Below are positions 1 through 37,829 of a DNA stretch of 64,000 nt, piece after piece. Source of the stretch: Pecten maximus (Eukaryota); assembly GCF_902652985.1 (NCBI RefSeq), contig NC_047016.1, positions 16,492,001-16,556,000 on the forward strand. The letters run 5' to 3'. The notes beneath the pieces are model-generated. The model worked only from the letters and a program-made list of their open reading frames with translations, was not told the origin of the DNA and searched no databases. Position 1 is the stretch's first letter, and every line of letters starts with the position of its first letter. The position numbers were made by a program, and so were the translations under genes.

Positions 1-1812
1 TATCATACTCAATACAAGATCCATACTGCTGTGTATGGTGGATATCATACACAACACAAGATCCATACTGTCGTGTATGGTGGATATCATACACAATACA
101 AGATCCATACTGTTGTGTATGGTGGATATCATACATAACACAAGATCCATACTGTCGTGTATGGTGGATATCATACATAATACAAGATCCATACTGCTGT
201 GTATGGTGGATATCATACTCAATACAAGATCCATACTGCTGTGTATGGTTGATATCATACACAATACAAGAACCATACTGCTGTGTATGGTGGATATCAT
301 ACACAACACAAGATCCATACTGCTGTGTATGGTGGATATCATACACAACACAAGATCCATACTGTCGTGTATGGTGGATATCATACTCAATACAAGATCC
401 ATACTGCTGTGTATGGTTGATATCATACACAATACAATATCCATACTGTCGTGTATGGTGGATATCATACACAATACAAGATCCATACCGCTGTGTATGG
501 TGGATATCATACATAATACAAGATCCATACTGCTGTGTATGGTGGATATCATACACAATACAATATCCATACTGCTGTGTATGGTTGATATCATACATAA
601 TACAAGATCCATACTGCTGTGTATGGTGGATATCATACACAATACAAGATCCATACTGCTGTGTATGGTGGATATCATACATAATACAAGATCCATACTG
701 TCGTGTATGGTGGATATCATACATAATACAAGATCCATACTGCTGTGTATGGTGGATATCATACACAATACAAGATCCATACTGTCGTGTATGGTGGATA
801 TCATACATCATACAAGATCCATACTGCTGTGTATGGTGGATATCATACACAATACAAGATCCATACTGTTGTGTATAGTGGATATCATACATAATACAAG
901 ATCCATACTGTTGTGTATAGTGGATATCATACATAATACAAGATCCATACTGCTGTGTATGGTGGATATCATACACAACACAAGATCCATACTGCTGTGT
1001 ATGGTGGATATCATACACAATACAAGATCCATACCGCTGTGTATGGTGGATATCATACACAATACAAGATCCATACTGCTGTGTATGGTGGATATCATGC
1101 ATAATACAAGATCCATACTGCTGTGTATGGTGGATATCATACACAACACAAGATCCATACTACTGTGTATGGTGGATATCATACACAATACAAGATCCAT
1201 ACTGCTGTGTATGGTGGATATCATACATAATACAAGATCCATACTGCTGTGTATGGTGGATATCATACTCAATACAAGATCCATACTGCTGTGTATGGTG
1301 GATATCATACTCAATACAAGATCCATACTGCTGTGTATGGTGGATATCATACACAACACAAGATCCATACTGCTGTGTATGGTGGATATCATACACAATA
1401 CAAGATCCATACTGCTGTGTATGGTGGATATCATACACAACACAAGATCCATACTGCTGTGTATGGTGGATATCATACACAATACAAGATCTGTACTGCT
1501 GTGTATGGTGGATATCATACACAACACAAGATCCATACTGCTGTGTATGGTGGATATCATACATAATACAAGATCCATACCGCTGTGTATGGTGGATATC
1601 ATACATAATACAAGATCCATACTGTCGTGTATGGTGGATATCATACACAACACAAGATTCATACTGCTGTGTATGGTTGATATCATACATAATACAAGAT
1701 CTGTACTGCTGTGTTTGGTGGATATCATACACAACACAAGATTCATACTGCTGTGTATGGTGGATATCATACATAATACAAGATCTGTACTGCTGTGTTT
1801 GGTGGATATCAT
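1..1812. repeat. 42-bp minisatellite (~43 copies, truncated by the window start), in a Drosha intron
   Basis: Unit GTATGGTGGATATCATACACAATACAAGATCCATACTGCTGT. It explains the periodic 14-aa ORFs on both strands. Confidence 0.97.
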
Positions 1813-2066
1813 GTCCGGCCGTCCGTCTGTTTGTCTGTCCTTCCGTCCTTCCATCCGATTATGGAGGATACAGAGCCACATGGCGGGGTCCTTGCTAACT
1901 TGTCGGTGTTCTAGTTATATTAAATAACAAAATTAAAAAAATAAAATAAAACAACAACAACTGGATATTGCCAGTTAACTTTTTAATTTTATTTCTGATA
2001 GTCTAGATATTTTAGAAACTTTTCTACGATGAGTTCTCTATGTATAAAATTGGTTTATTGTTGTAG

Positions 2067-2166
2067 TGTCCACTTATTCTACATGTTTCCCTGGCTGGAG
2101 GAAGGCGGACTGACCACCTACAGGGCGGCCATCGTTCAGAATCAACAGCTTGCTGTTCTGGCAAAG
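2067..2166 (+). CDS. DROSHA: Drosha internal exon A (RNase IIIa domain)
   Basis: ttgtag|TGTC...GCAAAG|gtaatg. Encodes SVHLFYMFPWLEEGGLTTYRAAIVQNQQLAVLAK, matching vertebrate Drosha SVHLYYLFPSLEEGGLATYRTAIVQNQHLAMLAK. Confidence 0.95.
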
Positions 2167-2196
2167 GTAATGTGTTGTGACTACAAACTATCAGCT

Positions 2197-3196: not shown

Positions 3197-3299
3197 AAAC
3201 TCGCCCTACAGAACTTCATGCTGTACGCCCACGGTCCAGACCTCTGTCACGAGTCCGACCTTAAACATGCCATGGCAAACTGTTTTGAAGCTCTTATGG
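3197..3299 (+). CDS. DROSHA: Drosha exon B (RNase IIIa second catalytic motif)
   Basis: atccag|AAA...ATGG|gtaagt. Encodes KLALQNFMLYAHGPDLCHESDLKHAMANCFEALMG; phase 0 in, phase 1 out. Confidence 0.96.
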
Positions 3300-3648
3300 G
3301 TAAGTAGGTTTTACGAACTGTTCTCGCCGATGTTCTGTGTTATGAAACGTGTACATTACAAACATGGTGTTTTTACCCTTTGCATTAATTGAAGAGGCTG
3401 GGAATATTTGATTCAGGTAGCTTGCCTGTCCCTCTGTCTCTCTGTGGACCAGTCTTGTCTAGATAACTCCAGTTTTGTTAAATAATTAATATGAATTTCA
3501 TGAACATCTGATGAACACAGGTATTCACTACACACTGAAGTAGTGTGCCTATATTAACTTTCAATCCTGGTATTTCATAGGGTAATGTTCCCTCTACATG
3601 ATTATTATTGAGTACAATGTATATGTGTTACCCAATATAATCATGATA

Positions 3649-5395
3649 TATCCTCTGTTATACCTCTGTGAGACATACATACATAGATACACCACGGCTA
3701 TCCTCTGTCAGACCTCTGTGAGACATACATAGATACACCACAGCTATCCTCTGTCAGACCTCTGTGAGACATACATACATAGATACACCACATTTATCCT
3801 CTGTGAGACATACATACATAGATACACCACATTTATCCTCTGTGAGACATACATACATAGATACACCACAGCTATCCTCTGTCAGACCTCTGTGAGACAT
3901 ACATAGATGCACCACGGCTATCCTCTGTCAGACCTCTGTGAGACATACATAGATAAACCGTGGCTATCCTCTGTCAGACCTCTGTGAGACATACATAGAT
4001 ACACCACGGCTATCCTCTGTCAGACCTCTGTGAGACATACATAGATACACCACGGCTATCCTCTGTCAGACCTCTGTGAGACATACATAGATACACCACG
4101 GCTATCCTCTGTCAGACCTCTGTGAGACATACATAGATACACCACAGCTATCCTCTGTCAGACCTCTGTGAGACATACATAGATACACCACAGCTATCCT
4201 CTGTCAGACCTCTGTGAGACATACATAGATACACCACAGCTATCCTCTGTCAGACCTCTGTGAGACATACATAGATACACCACAGCTATCCTCTGTCAGA
4301 CCTCTGTGAGACCTACATAGATACACCACAGCTATCCTCTGTCAGACCTCTGTGAGACATACATAGATACACACACCACGACTATCCTCTGTCAGACCTC
4401 TGTGAGACATACATAGATACACCACAGCTATCCTCTGTCAGACCTCTGTGAGACATACATAGATACACCACAGCTATCCTCTGTCAGACCTCTGTGAGAC
4501 ATACATAGATACACCACAGCTATCCTCTGTCAGACCTCTGTGAGACATACATAGATACACCACGGATATCCTCTGTCAGACCTCTGTGAGACATACATAG
4601 ATACACCACAGCTATCCTCTGTCAGACCTCTGTGAGACATACATAGATACACCACGGTTATCCTCTGTCAGACCTCTGTGAGACATACATAGATACACCA
4701 CAGCTATCCTCTGTCAGACCTCTGTGAGACATACATAGATACACCACAGCTATCCTCTGTCAGACCTCTGTGAGACATATATAGATACACGACAGCTATC
4801 CTCTGTCAGACCTCTGTGAGACATACATAGATAAACCACAGCTATCCTCTGTCAGACCTCTGTGAGACATATATAGATACACGACAGCTATCCTCTGTCA
4901 GACCTCTGTGAGACATACATAGATACACCACAGCTATCCTGTGTCAGACCTCTGTGAGACATACATACATAGATACACCACGGCTATCCTCTGTCAGACC
5001 TCTGTGAGACATACATAGATACACCACGGTTATCCTGTGTCAGACCTCTGTGAGACATACATAGATACACCGTGGCTATCCTCTGTCAGACCTCTGTGAG
5101 ACATACATACATAGATACACCACGGTTATCCTCTGTCAGACCTCTGTGAGACATACATAGTTACACCACGGCTATCCTCTGTCAGACCTCTGTGAGACAT
5201 ACATAGATGCACCACGGCTATCCTGTGTCAGACCTCTGTGAGACATACATAGATACACCACAGCTATCCTCTGTCAGACCTCTGTGAGACATACATAGAT
5301 ACACCGTGGCTATCCTCTGTCAGACCTCTGTGAGACATACATAGATACACCACGGCTATCCTCTGTCAGACCTCTGTGAGATATACATACACAGA
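3649..5395. repeat. 46-bp minisatellite (~37 copies) directly downstream of, and overlapping, the cGLR stop codon
   Basis: Unit GCTATCCTCTGTCAGACCTCTGTGAGACATACATAGATACACCACG, with 50-bp variants. Confidence 0.96.
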
Positions 5396-7413
5396 TATAC
5401 TATGGCTATCCTTTCTCTGGCAGTATTCCACTCATGTAATATATCCTTTGATTGTGCTGACTCCCAGTAGGCCCTGATGGCCCTGTGATAGTCTCCGAGT
5501 ATTTGATGACATATCCCCAGGAGAGTGTGAACTATCCAGAAAATCTGTCCCCCCTGATCCTTATCATACTGGACCTGTATCAGGTAGCGCAATGCTTCAT
5601 CACGTCCTCTGGTGTCTCCAAGGTCATGGTGACACAGGAAGTTCAGGAACAGGACGTATGGTAGGGGTGGAATGCTTATAGATCTGTATTCCTTGGACAG
5701 CTCCAAACAGAGATGAGGAAGATACATGTCCTCATGTTCAAAATGAATGGGCTTTGTGTATATTGTCCGGAGTCTCTGTAGTGTACAGCTATTTGGTAGA
5801 TGGTCCTGGTGTCTGTACAATGTGTGTAGTTCTGGATGCATTTCATTATCGTGTCTGAAGTATGATGCTAGTTTCATTACTTGTCTACTCATCTCTAGGC
5901 ATTTATTGAAATTTCCGGTCAGAAAATGAAGAGTTGCCAAATACAGCACATCTGTGCCCATTAAAGCACGAGGGGTCATCCAGTGCTTACATTTCCTCAA
6001 TCTCCGGTACCTTGTCTTGTTGTCTGTAGCAGACCTATTTTCAGATATATCTTTAGAGATAAGTTGTGATGCAAAACATCTGAGGTTGTCTGTTACAAAG
6101 AAATATGTGTGAACTTCGTCAAAATCTGACTTTGATGTAGATAATAAGTATATTGCCGTCCTGGTCATCCTGAGTGAGGGATGGCAATCACGTAATAGAA
6201 CACAAAGAGTTGTCCTATCCTCATCCATAATATTTTCTTGTGCAGTCTTTGGGCATGCAAGCTGAGCTTGTGTTGATATGTCACACAGAACTTCCCATAT
6301 TGAAGGTTTGACAAAGTTTCCTACTGAGAGGCACATCCATTTCATCCGAGAGTAGTTGTCCAAAAGGTCCAGTAGTATTTGTTTATTGTGTCCATGTACT
6401 TTCCTCTGGAATAAATTGTTGGCCAAGATGAAGTAATTGGGACAGAATCCTGTCCTGACCCAAGCAATCAGAATGTTGAAACAAAACCAGAAACAATAAA
6501 AAAGGTGTTTGTCTTGCCAGAACAGTTGGTTAGAATTCTCTATTGCATGAAATAGGATTGTTTTCATGAAGTAAGAGCACAAGATGTCATCATCCCCAAT
6601 GGTTTCTTTCAATGTCTCCTTTATTTGTTTTAAGAAATATTTCAGCAGTGTGTATACTTTGACTTGGATGTGGCTTAGGGAATGAACCAAAGATCTTTCT
6701 GCTGCTGCAAGTGAAATTCTCCATTGTAAAAATGTATCATTCGAACATTTATCTCCAACTGGAACAAGATGGCATCCACTGTTTACAATCTTGTCTATCA
6801 ATGTTTGATGTGGCCATCCATATAGACGAGTACGTGTAATCCATTCGTTAGCTTCCTTTGGCCAACTGTTACATGGAAAACAATGAACCATGTCCACACC
6901 GGTATCGTCCATTCCTGTAAAGGTACTACTAGGTCCATTGGATTCACATTTCAGACCTGACCTGGTAGCATAGTTACTGACACATTCCTCTCTAAAGATA
7001 TCACTGGAAATAAACACGGATTTCCCCATTCTAACTAGTGAATTAGTAAAGGCTTTATACAACAAGCCTTTTAGCTGACCTATCTCTAAATGAACGTAGC
7101 CAGGGCGGCAGTCTGCCTGTCTCATATATAAAATGGTTTTATGTGCCAGGTGTTGAGGAATACACTGATCAGGGTACATTACTGCTATGGTCTTGTCTAC
7201 AACCATTGCATCCATGTCGGAACCCTTTAGTAAACATCCTTCTCCAAAACTTCCAGTGTGAATGCAACATTTAAAATCAGAATTCATCAGCTGTTCATCT
7301 AAGACTACTGCCCTCCTTTTGATGTTAACGATCTCCTCTGTCCCGGTATATCTCCTCTCCAGGTATGTGGACAGAAGCAAAGACATCTGCTCACTCTCCA
7401 CAGAGTTCATCAT
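5356..7413 (-). CDS. cGAS-like receptor (Mab21/MB21 nucleotidyltransferase) with C-terminal TPR-like repeats, 685 aa, uninterrupted CDS
   Basis: NTase motif HTGSFGEGCLLKGSDMD (G54-S55, D66, D68) and third acid VDMV (D174). Mab21 motifs include WP..A.EW..R.R..GWP, HLVPVG, QWRISLAAAERSL, CSYFMKTILF and CPNYFI..NNLF. TPR-like helices: LYLATLHFLTGNFNKCLE and HTLLGICHQILGDYHRAIRAY. A splice acceptor (tttttacag|, ct at 7437-7438) lies 23 nt before the ATG. Confidence 0.92.
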   Translation of the reverse strand: MMNSVESEQMSLLLSTYLERRYTGTEEIVNIKRRAVVLDEQLMNSDFKCCIHTGSFGEGCLLKGSDMDAMVVDKTIAVMYPDQCIPQHLAHKTILYMRQADCRPGYVHLEIGQLKGLLYKAFTNSLVRMGKSVFISSDIFREECVSNYATRSGLKCESNGPSSTFTGMDDTGVDMVHCFPCNSWPKEANEWITRTRLYGWPHQTLIDKIVNSGCHLVPVGDKCSNDTFLQWRISLAAAERSLVHSLSHIQVKVYTLLKYFLKQIKETLKETIGDDDILCSYFMKTILFHAIENSNQLFWQDKHLFYCFWFCFNILIAWVRTGFCPNYFILANNLFQRKVHGHNKQILLDLLDNYSRMKWMCLSVGNFVKPSIWEVLCDISTQAQLACPKTAQENIMDEDRTTLCVLLRDCHPSLRMTRTAIYLLSTSKSDFDEVHTYFFVTDNLRCFASQLISKDISENRSATDNKTRYRRLRKCKHWMTPRALMGTDVLYLATLHFLTGNFNKCLEMSRQVMKLASYFRHDNEMHPELHTLYRHQDHLPNSCTLQRLRTIYTKPIHFEHEDMYLPHLCLELSKEYRSISIPPLPYVLFLNFLCHHDLGDTRGRDEALRYLIQVQYDKDQGGQIFWIVHTLLGICHQILGDYHRAIRAYWESAQSKDILHEWNTARERIAIVYLCMYISQRSDRG

Positions 7414-7621
7414 GGTTGTTATCAGGCTTTGTTAATCTGTAAAAAATAAATAAATAAATAAATAAGTAAATGTTGATGTTGTGGCCCCTGGTTTTTAGTG
7501 GGAGGTTGTGTAAAGGATTAAAGGAAAATTGAAAAAAAACCTCTGTTTTTTAGCAGATGGGTAGTTGTACATACAAGGACATAACTGATAAAATTTGGGT
7601 TTCATCTGTTCAGTTTGTGCA

Positions 7622-8165
7622 TTTTAGCTTGTCTCTTCGAAGAAGAGACGGATTAATAATGTCACCCTGGCGACGAGGTTGGTGTTTTCTAATATAAAGA
7701 TTGCAATGCAATTGTTAAAAGGCATATTGGTATTCCCTCCCTGAGTCAAAGTAAAAGATTTTTTTGTGTAAAAACCTATAGCTACTTTTTGACATATTTT
7801 GGGCAAAAATGTTTTTGGTGCAAGTGTTGAAAGGCATTAACGCATTGCTCTATAACTGTGCTAGGGTACTGATATTTGACATTAGTGTCCCTTCGGAGTT
7901 AGACTATCACATACTGGAGTTGAACTGAAAGATTTTTGGAAATAAAATGTTTTTTGACATGTTCTAGACCATGATTTTTTATGTGAACAAAAGTTTTATG
8001 TTTTTGTTTGAAAGGTTGAAAGGCATTAACACATCACTTTATAATTGAGTCAAACTAAAAGATATTTTTGGGGAAAATCCTGCTTTTTGACATATTTTGA
8101 ACATTATTTGTTATTTATTGACAAACACTTGTGAGACAAGCTATGCTGTTAAAGCTCTTTTGTTC
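7622..8165. mobile_element. Non-autonomous Helentron/HINE-like element
   Basis: Subterminal inverted repeats TAGCTTGTCTC (7625-7635) and GAGACAAGCTA (8133-8143). 5' hairpin GTCTCTTC-GAA-GAAGAGAC, T-rich ends and degenerate internal tandem repeats. Confidence 0.6.
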
Positions 8166-8469
8166 CTTGTCTATTTTACATATTCCTGGTACATTCATGA
8201 TACAATATTGCAGTAGATTTTTTGGTGTTCATATATTTTACATAACTTTTGAAGTGTAAAGTTAAATAAGATATACATGTATACTTGTGTGTGTTAAAAT
8301 GTCCAAAATCTCATAAACTGACCATTAACTTAACTGTCCTTATATTTTATATACTTATGTGTATTTAAAATGTCCAAAATCTAATAAACTCCTCACATGC
8401 CCTAGTAATGCATTGTCTACATGTAATGTGAATTGAAGAGTGCCTGTTTCTGCAGCTTGTCAGAAATAC

Positions 8470-8960
8470 AATTAAATCTTGGATTTCGAGAATTGAAGTT
8501 TGTTATCACTATTTCTTGAAAAGTTCTGTGGGGATATTTCTCAAACTTTATGCGTAGGTTCCCCTTGGTACATAGTTGAGCCTATTTAGTTTAAAGTTTT
8601 GATTAGTAAAAACATAATGGCCGACAGGTGGCCATCTTGGGTTTTGATAATTGAAGTTTGTTATCACTATTTCTTGAACAGTTTCCCTTTGTACCTAGTT
8701 GAGCCAATTCAATTTAGATTTTGGCTTAGAAAAACAAAATGGCCCACAGGCGGCCATCTTTGATTTTGATAATTGAAGATTGATATTGCTTGAAAAGTGC
8801 TGGAGGGATATTCCTCAATCTTCATATGTAGGTTCAACCTTGTTCTTGTTATCAGTTTATTAATAGGATAAGAAGTAGAAGGGAAAAATCAGTCTTGACA
8901 TAGGACAATAAAGATCATTCAATGGTAGTCGTCAAAATCCTTCTGGGATTCTTGTTGGAC
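8470..8960. mobile_element. Degenerate interspersed repeat (Helentron-like), same family as 13430-14242
   Basis: Shares GGCCATCTTG..TTTTGA blocks and the end motif AATAAAGATC.TTCAATGGT...AA.ATC....TGGGAT with the copy near 14190-14240. Confidence 0.5.
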
Positions 8961-10052
8961 GTACAAGTGGACCATGTCGGGTAAGAACTGCCAACCCACA
9001 TGTGACATACAGACAATGACATACAGGGTTTAGTACAGACATTGTTTACCTGTTTACCAGATCAATCAATTTTGAACAATGGATTATTCTACTGATTGGT
9101 AGGGTTTGATTGACTATAACCAGTTTGACTTAAAACTTCTCGAGTTAAAGTTCCTAACATATGTCATCAATGATTAACTTAAAACCATCAATCAACAATA
9201 GATCAATAATCATAACTTACCAATGATAAATAATTGATAAATCATTAATCAATAATCGATCAATAACTAATCAATAATTGATTATTGATCAATTATACTG
9301 ATCAATAATCAATAACTCATCAATAACAATAACATCTCAATATTCGATAACCAATCAATAATTGATCAAAAATAATAAGTAATTGATAACTGATCAATAA
9401 TCAGTCTATAACTGATAATTATATAACCAATTAATTATTAATCATTTAGTAATCAATGGCCAATCAATAAAAAGAAAAGATCAATAATTGATACCAAAAT
9501 CAATAATCATTACCCGATTAATTAATAATTAACCAATGATCCACAACCTATCAAACATCATGATCAGCAACCCATATCAATGATTAAATACCCAATACAT
9601 GTACTTAATTGTAAAATGAAAGCCCATTTTCGGACCTATCCCTTGGACACTAATTAATGAGACTTTTAACAGGTGTACCCATGCACAAGCTTCACCAGAT
9701 TATTGTAGTGATTTTAACTGAAAATTGTTCAGCAACCTATAGGCCTAAATAAAACAGATATATATTAGGGTTGTCTGGTGTCAAAAACATGTTGATGGAA
9801 TAAATATTCAAGAGGAAAGGAGTTTGAACTTGCATTGCATGTATACATAAGACCCATTAAATATTGTACTTTGCATGGTGGGCACCATGATATCGATCAC
9901 TTTTTGAAATAATCATATTTTCTCTAATGCTGGATCTTGATAATGAGCCCATGTGGCTGTTAAGTTATTCTATAGAAAGACGAATACTAGTAATGTTGAA
10001 ATCAGTGGCTCTAAAGATGTGTAATTTTACACCTGATGAAATACTTACCTCA

Positions 10053-11085
10053 GGCTACAACAATGTAGTTATGACGTTAAACTCTCCAGGACGAGAGGCT
10101 ACAACAATGTAGTTATGATGTTAAACTCTCCGGGACCACAGGCTACAACAATGTAGTTATGACGTTAAACTCTCCAGGACCACAGGCTACAACAATGTAG
10201 TTATGACGTTAAACTCTCCAGGACCACAGGCTACAACAATGTAGTTATGACGTTAAACTCTCCGGGACCACAGGCTACAACAATGTAGTTATGATGTTAA
10301 ACTCTCCGGGACCACAGGCTACAACAATGTAGTTATGACGTTAAACTCTCCGGGACCACAGGCTACAACAATGTAGTTATGACGTTAAACTCTCCAGGAC
10401 GAGAGGCTACAACAATGTAGTTATGACGTTAAACTCTCCAGGACCAGAGGCTACAACAATGTAGTTATGATGTACGTTAAACTCTCCGGGACCACAGGCT
10501 ACAACAATGTAGTTATGATGTTAAACTCTCCAGGACCAGAGGCTACAACAATGTAGTTATGACGTACGTTAAACTCTCCAGGACCAGAGGCTACAACAAT
10601 GTAGTTATGATGTTAAACTCTCCTGGACCAGAGGCTACAACAATGTAGTTATGACGTACGTTAAACTCTCCTGGACCAGAGGCTACAACAATGTAGTTAT
10701 GATGTTAAACTCTCCAGGACCAGAGGCTACAACAATGTAGTTATGACGTACGTTAAACTCTCCAGGACCAGAGGCTACAACAATGTAGTTATGACGTTAA
10801 ACTCTCCGGGACCAGAGGCTACAACAATGTAGTTATGATGTTAAACTCTCCAGGACCAGAGGCTACAACAATGTAGTTATGATGTTAAACTCTCCGGGAC
10901 GAGAGGCTACAACAATGTAGTTATGACGTTAAACTCTCCGGGGCGAGAGGCTACAACAATGTAGTTATGATGTTAAACTCTCCAGGACCAGAGGCTACAA
11001 CAATGTAGTTATGATGTTAAACTCTCCGGGACGAGAGGCTACAACAATGTATATATAGTTATGACGTTAAACTCTCCGTGACCAG
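10053..11085. repeat. 44-bp minisatellite (~23 copies)
   Basis: Unit GGCTACAACAATGTAGTTATGACGTTAAACTCTCCAGGACCACA, with 48-bp variants. Confidence 0.96.
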
Positions 11086-11189
11086 AGTTTGTTTGATCTG
11101 GGGCTTACACTTACAACTTGTCCATGACCACAACATTGTATGTCATGTGATTTGGTACTTCTAATGCCTTTGGATAGGCTAATTATTCA

Positions 11190-11495
11190 ATTTCCCTCGG
11201 AAGATTTCTTATAATATTACTTCCGTATCCCAGGGAACATTTCAAATAAAATAACTTAAGTATCCCTCGAAACATTTCATATAAAACAATTAAGCTTTTA
11301 AGTGTATTTCTATATGGAAGTTAAAAATAACTGGGGAGCCTTATATTGTGTCCCCATCAAGTTACGAAGGTCAAGGTCAGTTTTAAAGTAGACTGGTTAG
11401 GAAATCTGCCTTATACTTACATGACTTAGATAATGACAAGTGGGGATTCTCACATGGCCATCACCTAGAGGAAACTTCCCAGGAAATCACCAATT
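11190..11495 (-). promoter_or_regulatory. Candidate immune-responsive promoter/enhancer of the cGLR
   Basis: kB-like GGGGATTCTC (11442-11451), GGAAACTTCCC (11470-11480) and GGAAATCACC (11482-11491); STAT-like TTCCCAGGAA (11476-11485); ETS-like ACTTCCGT (11219-11226). Motif matches only. Confidence 0.3.
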
Positions 11496-11989
11496 ATAAA
11501 ATTGAATGTGTGCCTCACAAGCACAATTATAATGTTGAATCATCATAAGTATGCGGACACGTATGTACCAGCCAGTTCAAGTTTCTACCCACGTTTGATA
11601 TATTTCTGATGGCAAAATAACAAATGATGCTCAACGATGTGATTTTCCCATACAAACTACATGTATAATTAATTTTACCACCTCCCAAGGGGAAAGAACT
11701 CTAGGGTCATGAAATTCACAACTTTAAGATTTTACACACATTTGAAAACTACCAAAATCACTGTATATTAAAATAAACTTTAATTTTTTTCTTTTCTCGA
11801 TAGTTCTACATGTTTTTATATGTGGATTTGGTAATTTGGTACTAAAAGTATCTTTTCCGGGACGACATTAACACTTGATCGTTAAAACTGCCCAATGCAC
11901 CCCATTACCACCCCATTACCACATTTTGTATTGTGTAAATAAATTTGATGTACATGCATGTTTTGCCCAATACGATCTTGATGTCAGGA

Positions 11990-12680
11990 TGTGTATGTAA
12001 TAGTGTATATAAAAGTGTATGTACATGTTTTACCCAATATAATCGCGATGTCAGAATGTGTAATGTATATGTAATAGTGTATGTAAAAGTGTATATGTAT
12101 ATGTATATTACCCAATATAATTTCGATGTCAGGATATGTGTATGTAAATGTGTATGTATATGTATTACCCTATATAATTTTGATATTAGGTTCTGTATGT
12201 AATAGTGTATGTATTAGTGTATGTAATAGTGTATGTATTAGTTTATGTAATAGTGTATGTAAAAGTGTATGTAATAGTGTATGTAGAAGTGTATGTATAT
12301 GTATTACCCTATATAATTTTGATATCAGGTTGTGTATGTAATAGTGTATGTAATAGTATATGTAATAGTATATGTAATAGTATATGTAATAGTATATGTA
12401 ATAGTGTATGTAAAAGTGTATGTAATAGTGTATGTAGAAGTGTATGTATATGTATTACCCTATATAATTATGATATCAGGTTGTGTATGTAATAGTGTAT
12501 GTAATAGTGTATGTAATAGTGTATGTAAAAGTGTATGTAATAGTATATGTAATAGTGTATGTAAAAGTGTATGTAATAGTGTATGTAGAAGTGTATGTAT
12601 ATGTACTACTCTATATAATTTTGATATCAGGTTGTGTATGTAATAGTGTATGTATTAACCAATATCATTCTGATATCAGG
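11990..12680. repeat. AT-rich 12-bp tandem repeat with a higher-order spacer
   Basis: (GTATGTAATAGT)n punctuated by TTACCCTATATAATTTTGATATCAGG; ends about 65 bp before the exon C acceptor. Confidence 0.9.
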
Positions 12681-12746
12681 TTGACAGTTCTGAAGTTCAA
12701 GGTGTTTTTGCAGTATTTGTATAATACATGTATATTTTTGGAACAG

Positions 12747-12916
12747 GTGCTTTGTTTATAGACAACGGTATAGAGCTAGCTGGTCGTATTTTCTGTCAGA
12801 CGCTGTTTGATGATGACAGACTTGTGAAGACATGGCGAGAGCTGGCACTACACCCTCTCCAGGAGGAGGAGCCCAACGGAGATCGGCAGTGGGTGGAGTC
12901 TAGTCCGGCATTACAG
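12747..12916 (+). CDS. DROSHA: Drosha exon C (end of RNase IIIa and linker)
   Basis: gaacag|GT GCT...TTACAG|gtttgt. Encodes GALFIDNG...LHPLQEEEPNGDRQWVESSPALQ; phase matches exon B. Confidence 0.96.
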
Positions 12917-12933: not shown

Positions 12934-13261
12934 TTCTATTAAAGTTTTACCAGCAGTACCTGTACAATACTCTGACTTATTCTATTAAAGTTTTACCAGC
13001 AGTACCTGTACAATACTCTGACTTATTCTATTAAAGTTTTACCAGCAGTACCTGTACAATACTCTGACTTATTCTATGAAAGTTTTACCAGTAGTACCTG
13101 TACAATACTCTGACTTATTCTATTAAAGTTTTACCAGCAGTACCTGTACAATACTCTGACTTATTCTATTAAAGTTTTACCAGCAGTACCTGTACAATAC
13201 TCTGACTTATTCTATTAATGTTTTACACGCAGTACTTGTACCATACTCTGCCTTATTCTAT
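12934..13261. repeat. 46-bp minisatellite (~7 copies)
   Basis: Unit TTCTATTAAAGTTTTACCAGCAGTACCTGTACAATACTCTGACTTA. Confidence 0.93.
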
Positions 13262-13429
13262 TTCATATTATTTTCACAAGATGTAAGTTTGTCCATGAGT
13301 ATTCTCGTATTTTATGTCACCACCAAGGATCCTATTTAGTATGTGAGCTGGTCGAGCAAGACCTGCTGGATTGGAATCACCATCTCCTGATAATAACTCA
13401 AAGTCACACTTTTAAGGTCACTTGAGACT

Positions 13430-14339: not shown

Positions 14340-14443
14340 AAAATGTTGAATTTCGAGCAGGCAACTGGGATAACATTTAATCATATACGGCTGCTGGCCA
14401 AAGCGTTCACCCTGCGGAGTGTAGGCTATAACAACCTTACATT
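14340..14443 (+). CDS. DROSHA: Drosha exon D (start of RNase IIIb)
   Basis: ttgtag|AAA ATG...ACA TT|gtaagt. Encodes KMLNFEQATGITFNHIRLLAKAFTLRSVGYNNLTL. Confidence 0.96.
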
Positions 14444-14793
14444 GTAAGTACACATACCACGACTAGAGACAGTTTTCTTAATTAGTGTCAGTTTTAACTA
14501 ATGGATAAAGGTACACTGTATTATGATATGTGGTCTGAACGCCTATATAGGTTATGTCCTGGGTATTCTATATAATGAGAAGTATCATGTCTGGATGTAA
14601 TTGTACATGCCACTTTGATATTTTAACCCCAGTCAAGGTGACAACCAGAGGTCAAATTTCAAACCATTGTAAATTTTGTCAGGATTACTACTATAAACTG
14701 AAAGTTGTTCTCTTTGAATTATAATTTATGATTACCTGTTTGACAAGTTTAATGGGATAACTCATCGATATTTTGTGTGTAATGTTTTTGCAG

Positions 14794-14899
14794 GGGTCAC
14801 AACCAGAGGCTAGAGTTTCTCGGGGACACAGTTCTACAGCTGGTGGCATCACAGTACTTGTTCCGACATTTCCCTGACCATCACGAAGGCCATCTCTCA
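14794..14899 (+). CDS. DROSHA: Drosha exon E (RNase III signature)
   Basis: ttgcag|G GGT...TCA|gtaagt. Encodes [35 protein letters not shown]. Confidence 0.97.
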
Positions 14900-15504
14900 G
14901 TAAGTTCCTCGTAATGTTACATGATAATAACAGAAAGATGAAAACCAGCAGCTAAGTTCAAAACACAATTTAATGATATACAAAACTAAGAAAGTTACAG
15001 AGATAATTCACAATTAATATAAAGCGGTGTACATGGTGATGTAGTAAATCACTGTTAATTACTTATCGTAGTAAATCACTGTTAATTACTTATCATATAA
15101 CAGCTGTCCTTGAGTAAACCTTTCCTATCCGTTTCTCCAGAATAAAGAATGTTTATAAATCACACAGTTCACAGTTCCAGGCTTTTTGCTCTCCTTGACA
15201 ATTGTAAACCAGTTCTGAATAATAATTTGTCTCTCATGGTGTACTATAATACCAATCTTTAAAGTACATTCTCTAACCATCTGTTTTCTTGAATTCTGTT
15301 GTATACTTCTTGTAAACAACTGCCTGTCAATAAACACTAATTCTTGTAAACAAAAACATTACGTCTTCCACAATGTTCTCACTAGGCCTAGAATTTTCTA
15401 TTTACATATAAGGTCGTAAGAGTTATTTCCCTTGAGTAAACCATATACATACATCTTAGATTTCTGTAAGGGTTGCCTCCCTTCAATCACTGGTATATAT
15501 TAAA

Positions 15505-15599
15505 GTGTCGCAAAAAAAAATACGTCTCATTTGCAAATTTTTGGCCTCTTGGCCATCTTCAGAAAAATTTGCGAATGAGATGTATTTTTTTTGTGATAT
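15505..15599 (+). other. ~37-bp inverted repeat / stem-loop in Drosha intron E-F
   Basis: Arms 15505-15542 and 15563-15599, a 20-nt loop, one bulged A, and five G-U pairs in the sense RNA. Confidence 0.85.
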
Positions 15600-15718
15600 G
15601 AATGATTTAATTTTTTTTGAATCTATAAAAGTGTCAACTCAATTTATATTATTTATGTAATAATCTCAATCCTGTGGTGATTAAATCATGTGACCAAATT
15701 AATTTGCCATATCTCCAG

Positions 15719-15860
15719 TTACTAAGGAGTTCATTGGTGAATAACCGGACACAATCTATTGTGTGTGACGACCTCAACATGTCTGAGTATGCCATATTTG
15801 CTGAAACCAGGGGAGATAAGCTGGATATGAAAACAAAGGAAAAGGCTGATCTTCTGGAAG
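15719..15860 (+). CDS. DROSHA: Drosha exon F (RNase IIIb)
   Basis: ctccag|TTA...GAA G|gtaagt. Encodes LLRSSLVNNRTQ...KTKEKADLLE. Confidence 0.96.
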
Positions 15861-16265
15861 GTAAGTATTAATAAATTGTTTTGTACGTTTCACCCCAACA
15901 TTATCCTATCATATGATTTTACTGTCTATATACCAGGAAAAAAAACCCGAGGAAATTAACAAACAGGAAGAAAAAAAAAAAATTCTACTACCTTGAAATA
16001 CCATCAGTGGTTATTGATCGGTTATCATCTGTGATGTAGAATACAGACATAGCAATATTTCTATATTTTGAAAACCGTTAAATGCATCACCTCTCACACT
16101 TTATGTCATCCTAAAAAGAAAAAGTACTATAAGTATTCCTGCCACTTGTTATCAATGAGTCACAAATTGATTTTTTTATGGGTCAAGGTTCTTCGACATT
16201 TGTTGTAACCTTTTCAGCGTCTTTTGGCGTATCCTCTTTTATATTTACACTAAGACTTCAGATGA

Positions 16266-16585
16266 CATATTTGATGACATATTACACTAAAATCTATATT
16301 GAATGTTCTCACATATTTGATGACATATTACACTAAAATCTGTATTGAATGTTCTCACATATTTGATGACATATTACACTAAAATCTATATTGAATGTTC
16401 TCACATATTTGATGACATATTACACAAGAATCTGTATTGAATGTTCTCACATATTTGATGACATATTACACTAAAATCTGTATTGAATGTTCTCACATAT
16501 TTGATGACATATTACACTAAAATCTGTATTGAATGTTCTCACATATTTGATGACATATTACACTAAAATCTGTATTGAATGTTCT
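16266..16585. repeat. 46-bp minisatellite (~7 copies) running up to the exon G acceptor
   Basis: Unit CATATTTGATGACATATTACACTAAAATCTGTATTGAATGTTCTCA. Confidence 0.93.
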
Positions 16586-16596
16586 TGTCTTTGCAG

Positions 16597-16786
16597 CGTT
16601 CATTGGAGCGTTATTTGTGGACAAAGGTATCGACTACTGTAACATCTTCTGTAACGTCTGTTTCTTTCCTCGACTCAAGGACTTTATCATGAACCAGGAC
16701 TGGAATGATCCCAAGTCTCAGCTCCAACAATGCTGTCTCACCCTTAGGGAGCTGGACGGGGGTGAGCCTGACATCCCCCTATACAG
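16597..16786 (+). CDS. DROSHA: Drosha exon G (end of RNase IIIb, start of dsRBD)
   Basis: ttgcag|CG TTC...TAC AG|gtaagt. Encodes AFIGALFVDKG...NVCFFPRLKDFIMNQDWNDPKSQLQQCCLTLR...EPDIPLYR. Confidence 0.97.
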
Positions 16787-17146
16787 GTAAGTTATGCCAT
16801 TGTCTCCCTAGAGAGCTGCTCGTATGAGTCAAACATCCTCTATATAGGTAAGTAATGCCATTGTCTCCCTAGGGAGCTGTTTGTATGAGTCAAACATCCC
16901 CTATATAGGTAAGTAATGCCATTGTCTCCCTAGGGAGCTGCTTTTATGAGTCAAGCATCCCCTATATAGGTAAGTAATGCCATTGTCTCCCTAGGGAGCT
17001 GCTTCTGTGCCTGACATCCCTCTATACAGGTAAGTAATGCCATTGTCTCCCTAGGGAGCTGCTTCCATGCTTGACATCCCTCTATACAGGTAAATAATGC
17101 CATTGTCTCCCTAGGCGCTGATTGTGTGTCTGACATCCCCCTATAC
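16735..17146. repeat. 60-61-bp tandem repeat copied from the exon G 3' end and its splice donor
   Basis: Unit approximately TGTCTCCCTAGGGAGCTG...GACATCCCCTATACAGGTAAGTAATGCCAT. AG|GTAA recurs at 16787, 16848, 16909, 16970, 17030 and 17090. Confidence 0.92.
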
Positions 17147-17199
17147 TAGTAAAGACATATTTATTTTATGACAATTGCAAAACAGGTTATATCAGCTTA

Positions 17200-17851
17200 C
17201 ACTGATCACCTTCATTGGTCCTGATAGGAGTGTGCCAGGGGTCTTGTTTAATGCTCTATCAAAACAGATTACTACCTTTGGTATGAAACATCAATAGCGG
17301 AGGGTGAACATATTTTATATAAATAAGGCTGGTCTGACCCCTAGGGCCCCAGTGGCGGGCCCCAAAAGGGGAACTTTGGTGAATTTTTGCTTCAAAGCCC
17401 TACTCCTCCATAAGGGTGGTCATATTTCATATAAATGAGGCTGGTCTGACCCCTGGGGCCTGCATGGTGGGGTCCCAAATGGGGAACTTTGATGGATTTT
17501 TGCTTTTAAACCCTACATCTTAACTCTTGGGTTGATTACATCTGATTTTGTTGTGAATCATGATCGGGGGAGGGCAGTTTTAGTTTTTATGAATGAGGCC
17601 TTTGTGATCCCTGGGGCCAGTGGGGTGGTTGCTGAAATTTTGCTTTAAAACTCAACTCTTTCTCAAACTTTGAGTGGATTCAAACAAAGTTTGGTCTGAA
17701 ACATCATTGGGGGAGACCAATCATATTTTATATAAATTAAGCTGGAGGGGCCCTGTGTGGCGTGGCACCTAAAGGGGAATTTGCTGTAATTTTGCTTTCT
17801 ATATAATGATTCAATTGTCAGATGACCGTTAAGGGCCTTGGCTCTCTTGTT
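17200..17851. mobile_element. Degenerate Helentron/HINE-like element
   Basis: Internal degenerate tandem units and end motif TCAGATGACCGTTAAGG..C.TGG.CTCTTGTT. An inverted related end occurs at about 19335-19368. Confidence 0.45.
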
Positions 17852-17912
17852 ATAGACTGTGGTATGTTGAGGCCAGGGCGCAGGGTACAGAACCCAAAAC
17901 CTGTCTAACAGG

Positions 17913-18137
17913 GGGCTGCGGTGGCCGAGTGGTTAAGGTGTCCCGACACTTTATCACTAGCCCTCCACCTCTGGGTTGCGAGTTCGAAACCTACGTGGGG
18001 CAGTTGCCAGGTACTGACCGTAGGCCGGTGGTTTTTCTCCGGGTACTCCAGCTTTCCTCCACCTCCAAAACCTGGCACGTCCTTAAATGACCCTGGCTGT
18101 AATAGGACGTTAAACAAAAACAAACCAAACCAAACTT
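17913..18137 (+). mobile_element. tRNA-derived SINE, V-SINE-like, full length with target-site duplication
   Basis: A box TGGCCGAGTGG (17922-17932) and B box GAGTTCGAAACC (17980-17991). Central GGTTTTTCTCCGGGTACTCCAGCTTTCCTCC resembles the V-domain core. (CAAAC)n tail; TSD TCTAACAGG at 17904-17912 and 18138-18146. Confidence 0.9.
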
Positions 18138-18321
18138 TCTAACAGGAGTGAGGCATTGTCAAGGGAGAAAGTAGGGAGAATGAAGTTGCTAGACAGAAGT
18201 GAAAAGATGAAATCCTATATATAGTGACTTGTATAGTACAGATTTGTTGCCATTATAGATAGTTAATTTACTGAGTGGTGTCGATTGTCCAACTCTTCAA
18301 TGATTTTTTTTTAAATTTAAG

Positions 18322-18467
18322 GATGATAGAGGCATTTGGACCAACCAACACTCGAGAGTACACAGTGGCTGTGTATTTCAGGGACGAGAGATTAGCCAAA
18401 GGGATGGGCCACAGTATACAACAGGCAGAAATGGCCGCCGCCAGGAACGCACTCAAAGAGAGATCAG
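18322..18467 (+). CDS. DROSHA: Drosha exon H (dsRBD)
   Basis: tttaag|G ATG...TCA G|gtacac. Encodes MIEAFGPTNTREYTVAVYFRDERLAKGMGHSIQQAEMAAARNALKERS. Confidence 0.95.
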
Positions 18468-18765
18468 GTACACATTCTCACAACATGACTCAGGTTGTCT
18501 GTCATATCAAATATCACAATGGGATCCTGTGTCTGTCCATCTGTCTGTCAAAAACTGGTGAAAGTGTTTCACGGTTCATACAGATATGTCCTTGAATTTC
18601 ACTTCTTGCTTGGAATAGTCTGGAAATTCAGTATTAAGCCTCGAAAGTCTTGGACCAAATTGGGCCTCAATGCCTTGAAAAGTCCTTGAATTTATGACTT
18701 TAGACGAGATGATTCTGTTTACCAAAAAAAAACACCAAATCTCCGGTGTGGTGAGATAAAATTGA

Positions 18766-25900: not shown

Positions 25901-26159
25901 AAGCGTTCAGTGTAAGCCTTTACCTACCAAGATAAGTAACTGTCGTCGTAACTGTTCTTGGCACTGAAAAGCTGAGATTCATTTTTCACTGAACACTTTT
26001 GTAAAAGACTGTACATAACTACTTCAAAAACATTTATACAAATTTAGTCAAAACCTGTGAAACAAAATTGAAACTAATACAAGGGTCGTCACATAAAATG
26101 GTCTGCATGACAAAGGGTTAAAGCTAGCAACTATGTAATATATAATTAATATGCCTTCA

Positions 26160-26700
26160 GTGGAGGGTACTAAGTACAATATATTGCACATACTTCCATA
26201 TAATGTACAATATATCGTACATACCTCCATAGTGGAGGGTACATAATGTACAATATATCGTACATACCTCCATAGTGGAGGGTACATAATGTACAATATA
26301 TGGTACATACCTCCATAGTGGAGGGTAAATAATGTACAATATATCGTACATACCTCCAGAGTGGAGAGTACATAATGTACAATATATACCTCCAGAGTGG
26401 AGAGTACATAATGTACAATATATTGTACATACCACCAGAGTGGAGGGTACATAATGTACAATATATTGTACATACCTCCATAGTGGAGGGTACATAATGT
26501 ACAATATATTGTACATACCTCCAGAGTGGAGGGTACATAATGTACAATATATTGTACATACCACCAGAGTGGAGGGTACATAATGTACAATATATTGTAC
26601 ATACCTCCATAGTGGAGGGTACATAATGTACAATATATCGTACATACCTCCAGAGTGGAGGGTACATAATGTACAATATATCGTACATACCTCCAGAGTA
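26160..26700. repeat. 43-bp minisatellite (~12 copies)
   Basis: Unit GTGGAGGGTACATAATGTACAATATATCGTACATACCTCCAGA. Confidence 0.94.
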
Positions 26701-28717: not shown

Positions 28718-29050
28718 TCAACAAATGGGCACCCTGATCTGGTTCATCATTTCGTCTTTTGGGTTGTAACCCATGTTTTTTCTCTGCAAGAACATGTGAA
28801 TTTCTCTGTAGGAAGGCCTATAGCACTCATTCCTGTTCCAGCACTCGTACATTAAGTCGAAGATCTCCTTGGGGCAGTTACTAGGCTGGGGTAGGTAAAC
28901 CTCTTTGTTATCATTACGATAATAATGTCCAGCATTCTCGATCACCTGTTCGTCAGTCAGACTGTCGAAGGGCTGGTCCTTGGCGAAGGTTAATACTTCC
29001 CACAGCGTCACAGCAAATGACCAAACATCACTCTTAGTGGTAAATTTACC
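28718..29050 (-). CDS. DDR: Discoidin domain receptor, last exon (kinase C-lobe)
   Basis: ttttcag|GGT AAA TTT. Encodes GKFTTKSDVWSFAVTLWEVLTFAKDQPF...CW.RNE..RPS...RVPIC*. Confidence 0.95.
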   Translation of the reverse strand, partial: GKFTTKSDVWSFAVTLWEVLTFAKDQPFDSLTDEQVIENAGHYYRNDNKEVYLPQPSNCPKEIFDLMYECWNRNECYRPSYREIHMFLQRKNMGYNPKDEMMNQIRVPIC

Positions 29051-29053
29051 CTG

Positions 29054-37804: not shown

Positions 37805-37829
37805 GTAATTCACCAGTATAAATACTTAC

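What the first reader, a model, noticed from the sequence alone, without database searches (positions are those of the whole stretch)
3300..12746. Intact cGAS-like receptor nested antisense in the Drosha intron that splits the RNase IIIa motif
Seen: the intron interrupts ANCFEALMG|ALF and holds a complete 685-aa Mab21/cGLR ORF on the opposite strand, with its own 5'-UTR splice acceptor and candidate promoter. Established: cGLRs are innate nucleic-acid sensors that make cyclic dinucleotides for STING; insect cGLR1 is activated by dsRNA, and the family is expanded in bivalves. Drosha cleaves dsRNA hairpins. Inference: a possible dsRNA sensor and a dsRNA nuclease share one locus, so inducing the cGLR could dampen Drosha by convergent transcription, or create sense-antisense dsRNA that serves as ligand or substrate. 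I know of no description of this arrangement. Chance insertion of a member of a mobile expanded family is a real alternative.
Basis: partly seen in the sequence, partly recalled or inferred. Interest (0 to 1): 0.85.

Follow-up and report, generated by a model that had tools for sequence, protein, structure and literature searches.

The report
cGAS-like gene inside scallop Drosha intron
A king-scallop Drosha intron really does hold a complete, selectively maintained cGAS-like immune gene on the opposite strand, but it is a young Pecten-only copy from a large dispersed gene family, and nothing found here ties it functionally to Drosha.

Summary
In this Pecten maximus window, a phase-1 Drosha intron (3300-12746) splits ANCFEALM-G|ALF in RNase IIIa. 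It contains an intact 685-aa Mab-21/cGAS-like ORF on the minus strand (5356-7413).

The ORF folds confidently as a full cGAS-type nucleotidyltransferase plus a helical C-terminal domain. It keeps the GS...DxD...D catalytic residues and is under purifying selection. It has its own acceptor-like site 24 nt before the ATG. A TATA-containing block conserved among paralogues lies about 3.9 kb upstream, still inside the intron.

The functional link to Drosha is not supported.
- The gene is one of more than 120 scallop paralogues.
- It sits in a clade of 10 Pecten and 4 Argopecten genes with no 1:1 orthologue.
- It split from its nearest Pecten paralogues (dS 0.53) after the Pecten/Argopecten gene divergence (dS about 1.1-1.3).
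- None of the nine other clade loci examined is in Drosha. Eight are intergenic and one is nested in an unrelated dynein light-chain gene.
- The pI of the NTase half (7.2) is below that of known nucleic-acid-sensing cGLRs.

The best reading is an incidental DNA-level insertion of a whole gene unit into an older small intron. One open point: there is no canonical poly(A) signal before the Drosha exons.

The parts
2056..2181 (+). Drosha exon (RNase IIIa region), approximate bounds from a tblastn HSP
   Evidence: 69% identical to spider Drosha P0133, residues 1200-1241
3197..3299 (+). Drosha exon ending ...HAMANCFEALM + first base of the Gly codon; donor G|gtaagt
   Evidence: E 2e-14 to solved Drosha 6v5b
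3300..12746 (+). Phase-1 Drosha intron, 9447 nt, that holds the nested gene. The other Drosha introns in the window are about 350-1530 nt.
3300..3648 (+). Residual left part of the intron. It ends in one TTACCCAATATAAT-containing unit (3628-3641) like those of the array at 11936-12657.
3649..5389 (-). 46-bp minisatellite, about 38 copies. It is an amplification of the nested gene's own last codons plus stop. It lies directly 3' of the ORF and is shared by all six Pecten loci examined (window plus five paralogues).
5356..7413 (-). Intact single-exon CDS, 685 aa: cGAS-like NTase (about residues 1-350; G54 S55, D66 x D68, D174) plus a helical C-terminal domain (about 351-685)
7414..7438 (-). Acceptor-like AG (7438-7437) after a T-rich tract, followed by 23 nt of putative 5'-UTR before the ATG
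   Evidence: similar sites in paralogues
7439..10017 (-). Extra sequence in the putative 5'-UTR intron that is absent from the compact paralogues. It contains interspersed repeats (for example 8467-8674).
10052..11087 (-). 44-bp minisatellite (23 copies) amplified from sequence that is single-copy 250-317 nt upstream of the ATG in paralogue P0003
11264..11582 (-). Paralogue-conserved upstream block, the candidate promoter and first exon: TATAAG at 11345-11340 and the motif AAATACACTTAAAA (identical in P0001, P0002 and P0003) at 11309-11296
11936..12657 (+). Intron-resident repeat array (74/151-bp units with internal 12-mers) carrying TTACCCWATATAAT. It is not found in any paralogue locus and is the probable target sequence of the insertion.
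12747..12916 (+). Drosha exon (G)ALFIDNGIELAG...SPALQ; donor CAG|gtttgt
   Evidence: E 3e-9 to solved Drosha
14352..18480 (+). Remaining Drosha exons (about 14352-14444, 14795-14902 with NQRLEFLGD, 15710-15862, 16587-16787, 18320-about 18480 dsRBD). Approximate bounds.

Best explanation
An independent, functional member of the scallop Mab-21/cGLR + helical-domain family was copied at the DNA level into a pre-existing small Drosha intron. The copied unit is a TATA promoter block, a short non-coding first exon and 5'-UTR intron, one coding exon, and a 3' minisatellite. This happened in the Pecten lineage after it separated from Argopecten.

The unit, roughly 3649 to 11600-11900, landed in or beside an intron-resident repeat. 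That repeat now lies on both sides of the unit. Later minisatellite growth and other insertions inflated the intron to 9.4 kb.

The gene most likely works as its paralogues do: a ligand-activated nucleotidyltransferase that makes a nucleotide second messenger, transcribed from its own promoter. Its ligand is unknown and is not obviously nucleic acid. Its position in Drosha is incidental. Any effect on Drosha would be ordinary nested-gene interference, not an evolved circuit.

Shown: the anatomy, family membership, fold, catalytic residues, selection, relative age, and the lack of conservation of the arrangement among Argopecten clade members.

Inferred: promoter use, the insertion target, the enzymatic activity, and the absence of coupling.
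For: Family and fold:
- Pfam Mab-21 and Mab-21_C.
- AF2 model with pLDDT 93.5.
- Foldseek top hits are cGAS/cGLR, TM 0.63-0.75 normalised to the target.
- D66 and D68 are invariant, and G54, S55 and D174 are at least 90% conserved, in 91 family members.

Selection:
- dN/dS is 0.34 against P0002 and P0003.
- Terminal-branch pN/pS is 0.16-0.18, the same as in the non-nested sisters, p = 3e-11 against neutrality.
- 0 of 2000 neutral simulations keep the ORF open.

Young and lineage-specific:
- The gene sits in a clade with SH-aLRT support 100, made of 10 Pecten and 4 Argopecten genes, with no Mizuhopecten or Ylistrum member.
- dS is 0.53 to the Pecten paralogues and 1.07-1.26 to the Argopecten genes.

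Not conserved:
- The four Argopecten clade genes lie near an ITPR gene, as an intergenic tandem pair, and inside a Robl/LC7 gene.
- Five Pecten paralogues are intergenic, spread over five chromosomes.

DNA-level copying of a whole unit:
- The shared 46-bp 3' array is in all six Pecten loci and in none of the Argopecten loci.
- The shared upstream block is 476-483 nt before the ATG in P0002 and P0003 but about 3.9 kb before it here.
- The acceptor-like site is conserved.

Target:
- TTACCCWATATAAT occurs 6 times in the window against 0.19 expected, on both sides of the unit, and in no paralogue locus.

The intron is older than the insert:
- The same intron position is read through in several other taxa's fragments.

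Base rate:
- Nested genes are common and mostly lineage-specific (PMC2151771; PMC3786989).
Against: - I could not fetch the orthologous Drosha intron of any other scallop. Non-conservation therefore rests on the gene tree, dS values and the positions of annotated relatives. An unannotated or decayed copy elsewhere would be missed.
- Gene conversion among Pecten paralogues could make the copy look younger than it is.
- No expression data were available.
- The nested gene has no canonical AATAAA/ATTAAA on its strand between its stop (5356) and 2059, which is beyond two Drosha exons. Antisense read-through into Drosha exons is therefore not excluded.
- The closest paralogue, P0002, sits head-to-head with a dsRBD-domain gene. 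This is an odd coincidence with the dsRNA theme.
Confidence: 0.78

Rival explanations
1. Evolved sense-antisense circuit. Induction of the nested cGLR lowers Drosha output by convergent transcription. Alternatively, its transcript pairs with Drosha pre-mRNA or mRNA to form dsRNA that acts as a cGLR ligand or an RNase III substrate.
For: - The two genes are antisense and convergent, and the nested unit appears to have its own promoter.
- No canonical poly(A) signal lies on the nested strand before Drosha exons 3197-3299 and 2056-2181, so exon-overlapping antisense RNA is possible.
- Nested genes can interfere with their hosts (PMC3192792).
- Some invertebrate cGLRs sense dsRNA.
Against: - The arrangement is absent from all four Argopecten clade relatives, and the copy is young.
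- Paralogues show no consistent genomic partner.
- pI is 7.2 for the NTase half, against more than 8.5 for nucleic-acid-sensing cGLRs.
- Selection on the nested copy is no different from that on its intergenic sisters.
- From general knowledge, intronic antisense pairing would be nuclear and transient, whereas cGLR signalling is described as cytosolic.
- Variant poly(A) hexamers exist inside the intron at 3837, 3798 and 3555.
Confidence: 0.07
2. Silent passenger. The ORF is a recently inserted copy that is not, or no longer, transcribed in its present location. It looks intact only because too little time has passed.
For: - No transcript evidence could be obtained. The exact protein is recorded only on the genome assembly.
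- The distance from the promoter block to the ATG has been inflated from about 0.5 kb to about 3.9 kb by repeats.
- No canonical poly(A) signal is nearby.
Against: - About 0.14-0.17 synonymous changes per site have accumulated on this branch with pN/pS 0.16-0.18, which rejects neutrality at p = 3e-11.
- No neutral simulation keeps a 685-codon ORF open.
- All catalytic and family-invariant residues are retained.
Confidence: 0.1
3. Transposon- or retroposition-mediated spread. The gene was carried into the intron by a mobile element or as a retrocopy.
For: - Copies are dispersed over at least seven Pecten maximus chromosomes as compact single-coding-exon units with a 3' tandem array.
- From general knowledge, bivalve mobile elements often carry satellite arrays.
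Against: - The promoter block and the 5'-UTR intron acceptor were copied too, which argues against a processed retrocopy.
- There is no poly-A tail and no shared terminal sequence beyond the arrays.
- No target-site duplication or terminal inverted repeats were recognised around the unit.
- No transposase or reverse-transcriptase domain occurs in the four 53-61-aa non-repeat intron ORFs scanned; no other intron ORF outside the cGLR and the repeat arrays reaches 50 aa.
Confidence: 0.05

Closest known systems
Animal cGAS-like receptors (cGLRs), including the TPR-fused subset and the bivalve radiations described by Li et al. 2023 (bioRxiv 10.1101/2023.02.22.529553); solved example Sp-cGLR1 (PDB 8gjy)
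   Same: - Mab-21 NTase and Mab-21_C domains.
- cGAS-type bilobal fold.
- GS...DxD...D catalytic residues.
- Membership of a radiation of more than 100 genes in a bivalve lineage.
- A C-terminal helical extension, as in the reported cGLR-repeat fusions.
   Different: - The ligand and product are unknown.
- The NTase half is near-neutral (pI 7.2), not basic.
- The C-terminal domain reaches only sub-threshold TPR scores.
- No biochemical data exist for this scallop subfamily.
Protein-coding genes nested antisense in introns of unrelated host genes, for example Drosophila 2mit in timeless2 (PMC3786989) and human KTI12 in TXNDC12 (PMC3192792)
   Same: - The whole CDS lies within one host intron on the opposite strand, apparently with its own promoter.
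- Such pairs are frequent: about 6% of Drosophila genes and 972 human nested genes.
- They are usually lineage-specific (PMC2151771).
- Host interference is possible in principle.
   Different: - Here the host is Drosha and the guest is an innate-immune NTase.
- The 3' end of the guest transcript is undefined and might overlap host exons.
- No expression data exist.
Dispersed segmental duplicates of immune gene families in bivalves
   Same: A young paralogue arising by DNA-level copying of promoter, gene and flanking repeat. Its copies lie on many chromosomes and evolve under moderate purifying selection (omega about 0.3).
   Different: The copied unit is unusually compact. It is marked by a minisatellite seeded from the gene's own last codons and stop.

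Membership tests
cGLR / cGAS-like receptor (Mab-21 nucleotidyltransferase) | Mab-21 NTase domain plus Mab-21 C-terminal (HhH/H2TH-like) domain | tested here: met
   Pfam PF03281 (37 bits against a cutoff of 24) and PF20266 (47 bits against a cutoff of 24). PDB phmmer hits 8gjy at 1e-13 and cGAS at 6e-9.
cGLR / cGAS-like receptor (Mab-21 nucleotidyltransferase) | Complete bilobal cGAS-type fold | tested here: met
   AF2 pLDDT 93.5, pTM 0.91. Foldseek against PDB gives cGAS/cGLR/MAB21L1 with probability 1.00, target-normalised TM 0.62-0.75 and about 350-420 aligned columns.
cGLR / cGAS-like receptor (Mab-21 nucleotidyltransferase) | Catalytic G-S loop and acidic triad [DE]x[DE]...[DE] | tested here: met
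   G54 S55, D66 x D68 and D174 are present. D66 and D68 are invariant and the others at least 90% conserved in 91 homologues. D174 aligns with the third catalytic Asp strand of 8gjy and cGAS.
cGLR / cGAS-like receptor (Mab-21 nucleotidyltransferase) | Ligand-activated synthesis of a cyclic di-/oligonucleotide that signals through STING | not testable with these tools
   Needs recombinant enzyme assays and a STING binding or reporter assay.
Nucleic-acid-sensing cGLR subclass (dsRNA/dsDNA) | Basic protein or ligand groove (pI above 8.5 in Li et al. 2023) | tested here: not met
   pI is 7.16 for residues 1-350 and 7.89 for the full length; the family median is 6.6, against the criterion quoted. 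Whole-domain pI is only a proxy for groove charge.
cGLR-TPR fusion architecture | Recognisable tetratricopeptide repeats C-terminal to the NTase | tested here: inconclusive
   Only sub-threshold TPR_1, TPR_2, TPR_12 and ANAPC3 hits (15-17 bits against cutoffs of 27-30). The region is confidently all-helical in the full model. The isolated-domain model failed (pLDDT 37), so no fold search was run on it.
Drosha (class 2 RNase III), host gene | Tandem RNase III domains plus dsRBD, collinear with known Droshas | tested here: met
   Exon-by-exon matches to solved Drosha and to full-length Droshas. NQRLEFLGD is at 14810. The annotated 1443-aa product has Helical_CED_Drosha, two Ribonuclease_3 domains and dsrm.
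Nested (intronic) gene | Entire coding sequence inside one intron of the host | tested here: met
   The CDS at 5356-7413 lies within the intron 3300-12746.
Nested (intronic) gene | Whole transcription unit (promoter to poly(A) site) inside the intron | tested here: inconclusive
   The candidate promoter at about 11345 is inside the intron. No canonical poly(A) signal occurs before 2059, only variant hexamers at 3837, 3798 and 3555.
Processed retrogene | Intronless copy lacking the parental promoter, with a poly-A tail and target-site duplication | tested here: not met
   The acceptor-like site and upstream promoter block are shared with paralogues. There is no poly-A tract and no shared sequence beyond the arrays.
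Conserved regulatory sense-antisense gene pair | Arrangement retained in related species | tested here: not met
   None of the four Argopecten clade members is in Drosha. There is no Mizuhopecten or Ylistrum member in the clade. The orthologous intron itself could not be fetched.

The most novel reading that the evidence does not exclude
The nested cGLR lacks a canonical poly(A) signal inside the intron. Its transcript may therefore run on, antisense, through Drosha exon 3197-3299, which encodes the RNase IIIa catalytic motif, and perhaps through exon 2056-2181. If so, immune induction of this Pecten-specific gene would produce an exon-overlapping natural antisense RNA to Drosha. That would lower Drosha or miRNA output, or generate dsRNA, during infection: a newly born, lineage-specific link between cGLR signalling and miRNA biogenesis.
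Probability: 0.06. Interest if true: 0.7.

Novelty: new member of a known kind. Interest (0 to 1): 0.25.

Why it matters
As it stands, this is a clean, well-resolved example of how a rapidly expanding immune gene family seeds new copies into the introns of essential genes.

The promoter, 5'-UTR intron, coding exon and a self-derived 3' minisatellite travel together. A roughly 1.5-kb intron is inflated about six-fold without apparent harm to the host gene. This is useful for annotating bivalve cGLR repertoires and for understanding intron growth, but it is not surprising to a specialist.

It would matter much more if the nested transcript overlaps Drosha exons and responds to infection. That would be a natural experiment in coupling innate immune signalling to miRNA processing.

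Tried and rejected
(1) Direct test of the orthologous Drosha intron in other scallops: failed.
- The exon-based representative search returned fragments and non-molluscan Droshas.
- A search with the spider representative listed only arthropods.
- A profile of annelid Drosha plus separate scallop exon rows (A5) found only 9 proteins and no molluscs, because the index words came from the divergent N-terminus. MAFFT repeatedly scattered the short exon rows.
- Two ENA fragments with the equivalent exon had no retrievable DNA. One gene-call table shows no ORF above 125 aa within 10 kb upstream, but the organism is unknown.
- Two further unnamed Droshas are not scallop.

Every Drosha search was exon by exon, by reference.

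(3) Segmental duplication shared with Drosha: rejected. The dsRBD gene next to paralogue P0002 shows no similarity to Drosha exons; only a common interspersed repeat is shared. Its exons have no informative PDB hit.

(4) Transposon cargo: no transposon-related Pfam domain in the four 53-61-aa non-repeat intron ORFs that were scanned, and no shared termini beyond the arrays.

(5) Structured RNA in the window: no Rfam hit at gathering score.

(6) The isolated C-terminal domain model was too poor (pLDDT 37), so no fold search was run on it.

Full report
**Source and observation**

The window is from Pecten maximus. The nested protein is identical to a protein on the 55.1-Mb record LR736839.1 of GCA_902652985.1. 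It contains no N runs.

On the plus strand a Drosha exon (3197-3299) ends ...HAMANCFEALM plus the first base of a Gly codon, followed by gtaagt. The next exon starts at 12747, after ...ggaacag, and reads (G)ALFIDNGIELAG....

- Both exons match solved Drosha structures (E 2e-14 and 3e-9).
- They align to consecutive residues of full-length Droshas.
- The remaining 3' exons, including NQRLEFLGD of RNase IIIb and the dsRBD, follow up to about 18.5 kb.
- The public annotation models a 1443-aa Drosha across the locus.

The intron is therefore 3300-12746, phase 1, 9447 nt. The other Drosha introns in the window are about 350-1530 nt.

Fragments from several other, unnamed organisms read through an intron at exactly this position. 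One fragment reads ANCLEALMGALF without interruption. So the intron is older than its cargo but is not universal.

**The nested gene**

ORF 5356-7413 (minus strand) is 685 aa.

- It has Mab-21 and Mab-21_C above Pfam thresholds.
- Its best solved relatives are Sp-cGLR1 8gjy and cGAS.
- A 91-sequence alignment gives a high-confidence AlphaFold model (pLDDT 93.5, pTM 0.91).
- The N-terminal half of that model superposes on the whole cGAS/cGLR catalytic domain (target-normalised TM 0.63-0.75).
- Residues about 351-685 are confidently all-helical, with only sub-threshold TPR hits. A separate model of that half failed.
- The NTase signature is intact. G54 and S55, D66-x-D68 and D174 are present; D66 and D68 are invariant across 91 homologues.

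The NTase half has pI 7.2 and the family median is 6.6. Li et al. 2023 report pI above 8.5 for dsRNA- and dsDNA-sensing cGLRs, and they suggest non-nucleic-acid ligands for acidic cGLRs. The premise that this protein is a dsRNA sensor is therefore not supported, although whole-domain pI is only a proxy.

**Anatomy of the transcription unit**

*5' end.* On the gene's strand a T-rich tract ending in acag lies 24 nt before the ATG. Equivalent sites lie 13-32 nt before the ATG of most paralogues. A 5'-UTR intron is therefore a family trait.

*Candidate promoter.* Sensitive comparison of upstream regions found a block shared with paralogues P0002, P0003, P0005 and an Argopecten member.
- It contains TATAAG, at window 11345-11340.
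- About 36 nt downstream it has the motif AAATACACTTAAAA, identical in P0001, P0002 and P0003, at 11309-11296.
- In P0002 and P0003 this motif is 476-483 nt before the ATG. In the window it is about 3.9 kb before it.
- The difference is made up of a 44-bp minisatellite (10052-11087), amplified from sequence that is single-copy in P0003's locus, and about 2.6 kb of extra repeat-bearing DNA.

*3' end.* A 46-bp minisatellite of about 38 units (3649-5389) begins inside the last codons.
- The C-terminus ...RIAIVYLCMY.SQRSDRG is conserved across the family, so the array is an amplification of the gene's own end plus its stop.
- The same array follows the ORF in all five other Pecten loci examined and in no Argopecten locus.
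- Beyond the arrays the loci share nothing, and there is no poly-A tail.
- No transposon-related Pfam domain was found in the four 53-61-aa non-repeat intron ORFs scanned.

The copied unit is therefore promoter, 5'-UTR intron, ORF and array, copied as DNA.

*Insertion target.* The motif TTACCCWATATAAT occurs six times in the window against 0.19 expected. One copy directly abuts the left end of the unit (3628). Five lie in the array at 11936-12657 on the right. None occurs in any paralogue locus.

I infer that the unit (about 3649 to 11600-11900) inserted into an intron-resident repeat. That leaves roughly 350 nt plus 850-1150 nt of original intron, in line with the neighbouring introns.

**Age, selection and conservation**

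*Family size.* The family search returned 124 homologues. Every named one is from Pecten, Mizuhopecten, Argopecten or Ylistrum. The best paralogue is 70% identical and the best Mizuhopecten protein 61%.

*Tree.* In a 58-sequence tree the window's gene lies in a clade with SH-aLRT support 100, made of 10 Pecten and 4 Argopecten genes. It has no 1:1 orthologue.

*Divergence.* dS is 0.53 to P0002 and P0003 but 1.07-1.26 to the Argopecten genes. Pairwise dN/dS is 0.34.

*Terminal branch.* On the branch leading to this copy, pN/pS is 0.16-0.18, the same as for its two intergenic sisters (0.16-0.20), and departs from neutrality at p = 3e-11. None of 2000 neutral simulations kept the ORF open. Conditioning on codons where both sisters agree biases pN/pS downward, but equally for all three branches.

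The gene has therefore been maintained by selection, and it arose after the Pecten/Argopecten gene divergence.

*Genomic contexts of clade members.*
- Argopecten P0013 lies near an ITPR gene.
- P0016 and P0021 are an intergenic tandem pair.
- P0026 lies inside the range of a Robl/LC7 gene, on the same strand.
- Pecten P0002, P0003, P0029, P0005 and P0004 are intergenic, spread over five chromosomes. Their neighbours include a dsRBD gene, a WD40 gene, an IRK channel, an SNF transporter and a C1q gene.

Two of the ten clade loci examined are nested, in unrelated host genes.

*Base rates.* Nested genes are common in general: about 6% of Drosophila genes (PMC3786989) and 972 in human, many of them lineage-specific (PMC2151771).

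As a rough estimate of my own: at least 30 Pecten copies are listed, and about one in five of the examined loci is nested. One copy landing in a thematically interesting host gene is therefore not surprising.

**Mechanistic reading**

The best-supported account is an incidental, recent insertion of a functional, independently transcribed cGLR-family gene into a Drosha intron.

Nested genes can disturb host transcription (PMC3192792).

One feature keeps it alive. On the nested gene's strand there is no AATAAA or ATTAAA between the stop (5356) and 2059, which is past Drosha exons 3197-3299 and 2056-2181. Only variant hexamers lie inside the intron, at 3837, 3798 and 3555. Argopecten relatives have a canonical signal 105-197 nt after the stop. 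Pecten paralogues have one at 862-1959 nt after the stop, just after their arrays in P0002 and P0029.

Whether the transcript ends in the intron or runs antisense into Drosha exons needs 3'-end data.

**What failed**

I could not retrieve the Drosha locus of another scallop. Non-conservation therefore rests on the gene tree, dS values and paralogue positions. Expression, polymorphism and biochemistry could not be tested.

**Verdict**

The nested arrangement turned up in none of the literature searches I ran. It is nevertheless an ordinary kind of event involving an already annotated gene.

Noticed in passing
window 3649-5389; also L006 11976-12818, L007 14363-15499, L008 11792-13803, L009 and L010: The 46-bp minisatellite 3' of the cGLR ORF is built from the gene's own last codons plus its stop codon. 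It is present at all six Pecten maximus loci examined (the window plus five paralogues) and at none of the four Argopecten loci. It therefore arose once in the Pecten lineage and travels with the gene.
   Followed up: yes
window 16771-17146: A 61-bp array of about 6 copies amplifies the last ~47 nt of a Drosha exon together with its CAG|GTAAGT donor. This leaves five extra consensus donor sites in the downstream intron. 61 is not a multiple of 3, so using any of them would shift the reading frame.
   Followed up: partly
window 1-1812, 2197-2916, 12934-13262, 16265-16585, 35864-36726, 41967-43834, 45004-46607, 58042-60837: The window is unusually rich in long minisatellites with 24-49-bp units, several of them 1.6-2.8 kb. 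They explain the G-rich, strongly skewed composition at 42-47 kb and 58-61 kb. Several sit inside Drosha introns.
   Followed up: partly
L006 3558-8641 (P. maximus LR736842.1): The closest paralogue (P0002) lies 1.4 kb head-to-head with a 316-aa gene carrying dsRNA-binding domains (dsrm, DND1_DSRM). It is not derived from Drosha (no tblastx similarity) and has no informative PDB match. This is a second dsRBD-gene neighbour among ten loci. It is probably coincidence, but that was not tested.
   Followed up: partly
L005 5805-14710 (Argopecten irradians CM084268.1): Argopecten family member P0026 lies inside the annotated range of a Robl/LC7 dynein light-chain gene, on the same strand. Its annotated start appears to be about 52 codons downstream of the family's usual ATG.
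   Followed up: no
window ~17911-18145; L003 18039-18226, L004 4319-4378, L005 55-111, L006 4383-4574 and 5716-5941: An interspersed repeat of about 230 bp in Drosha's last intron recurs near cGLR paralogues in both Pecten and Argopecten (72-88% nucleotide identity). It is probably a common scallop SINE- or MITE-like element.
   Followed up: no
window ~26000-40000, minus strand (exons at 37813-38334 and 29436-29882): Drosha's downstream neighbour, in convergent orientation, is a discoidin-domain receptor tyrosine kinase-like gene (DDR1-2 DS-like domain at E 2e-62; Tyr kinase domain at E 4e-29).
   Followed up: no
window 10052-11087 and L007 9684-9751: The 44-bp minisatellite in the nested gene's putative 5'-UTR intron is amplified from a sequence that is single-copy at the equivalent place in paralogue P0003.
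   Followed up: partly
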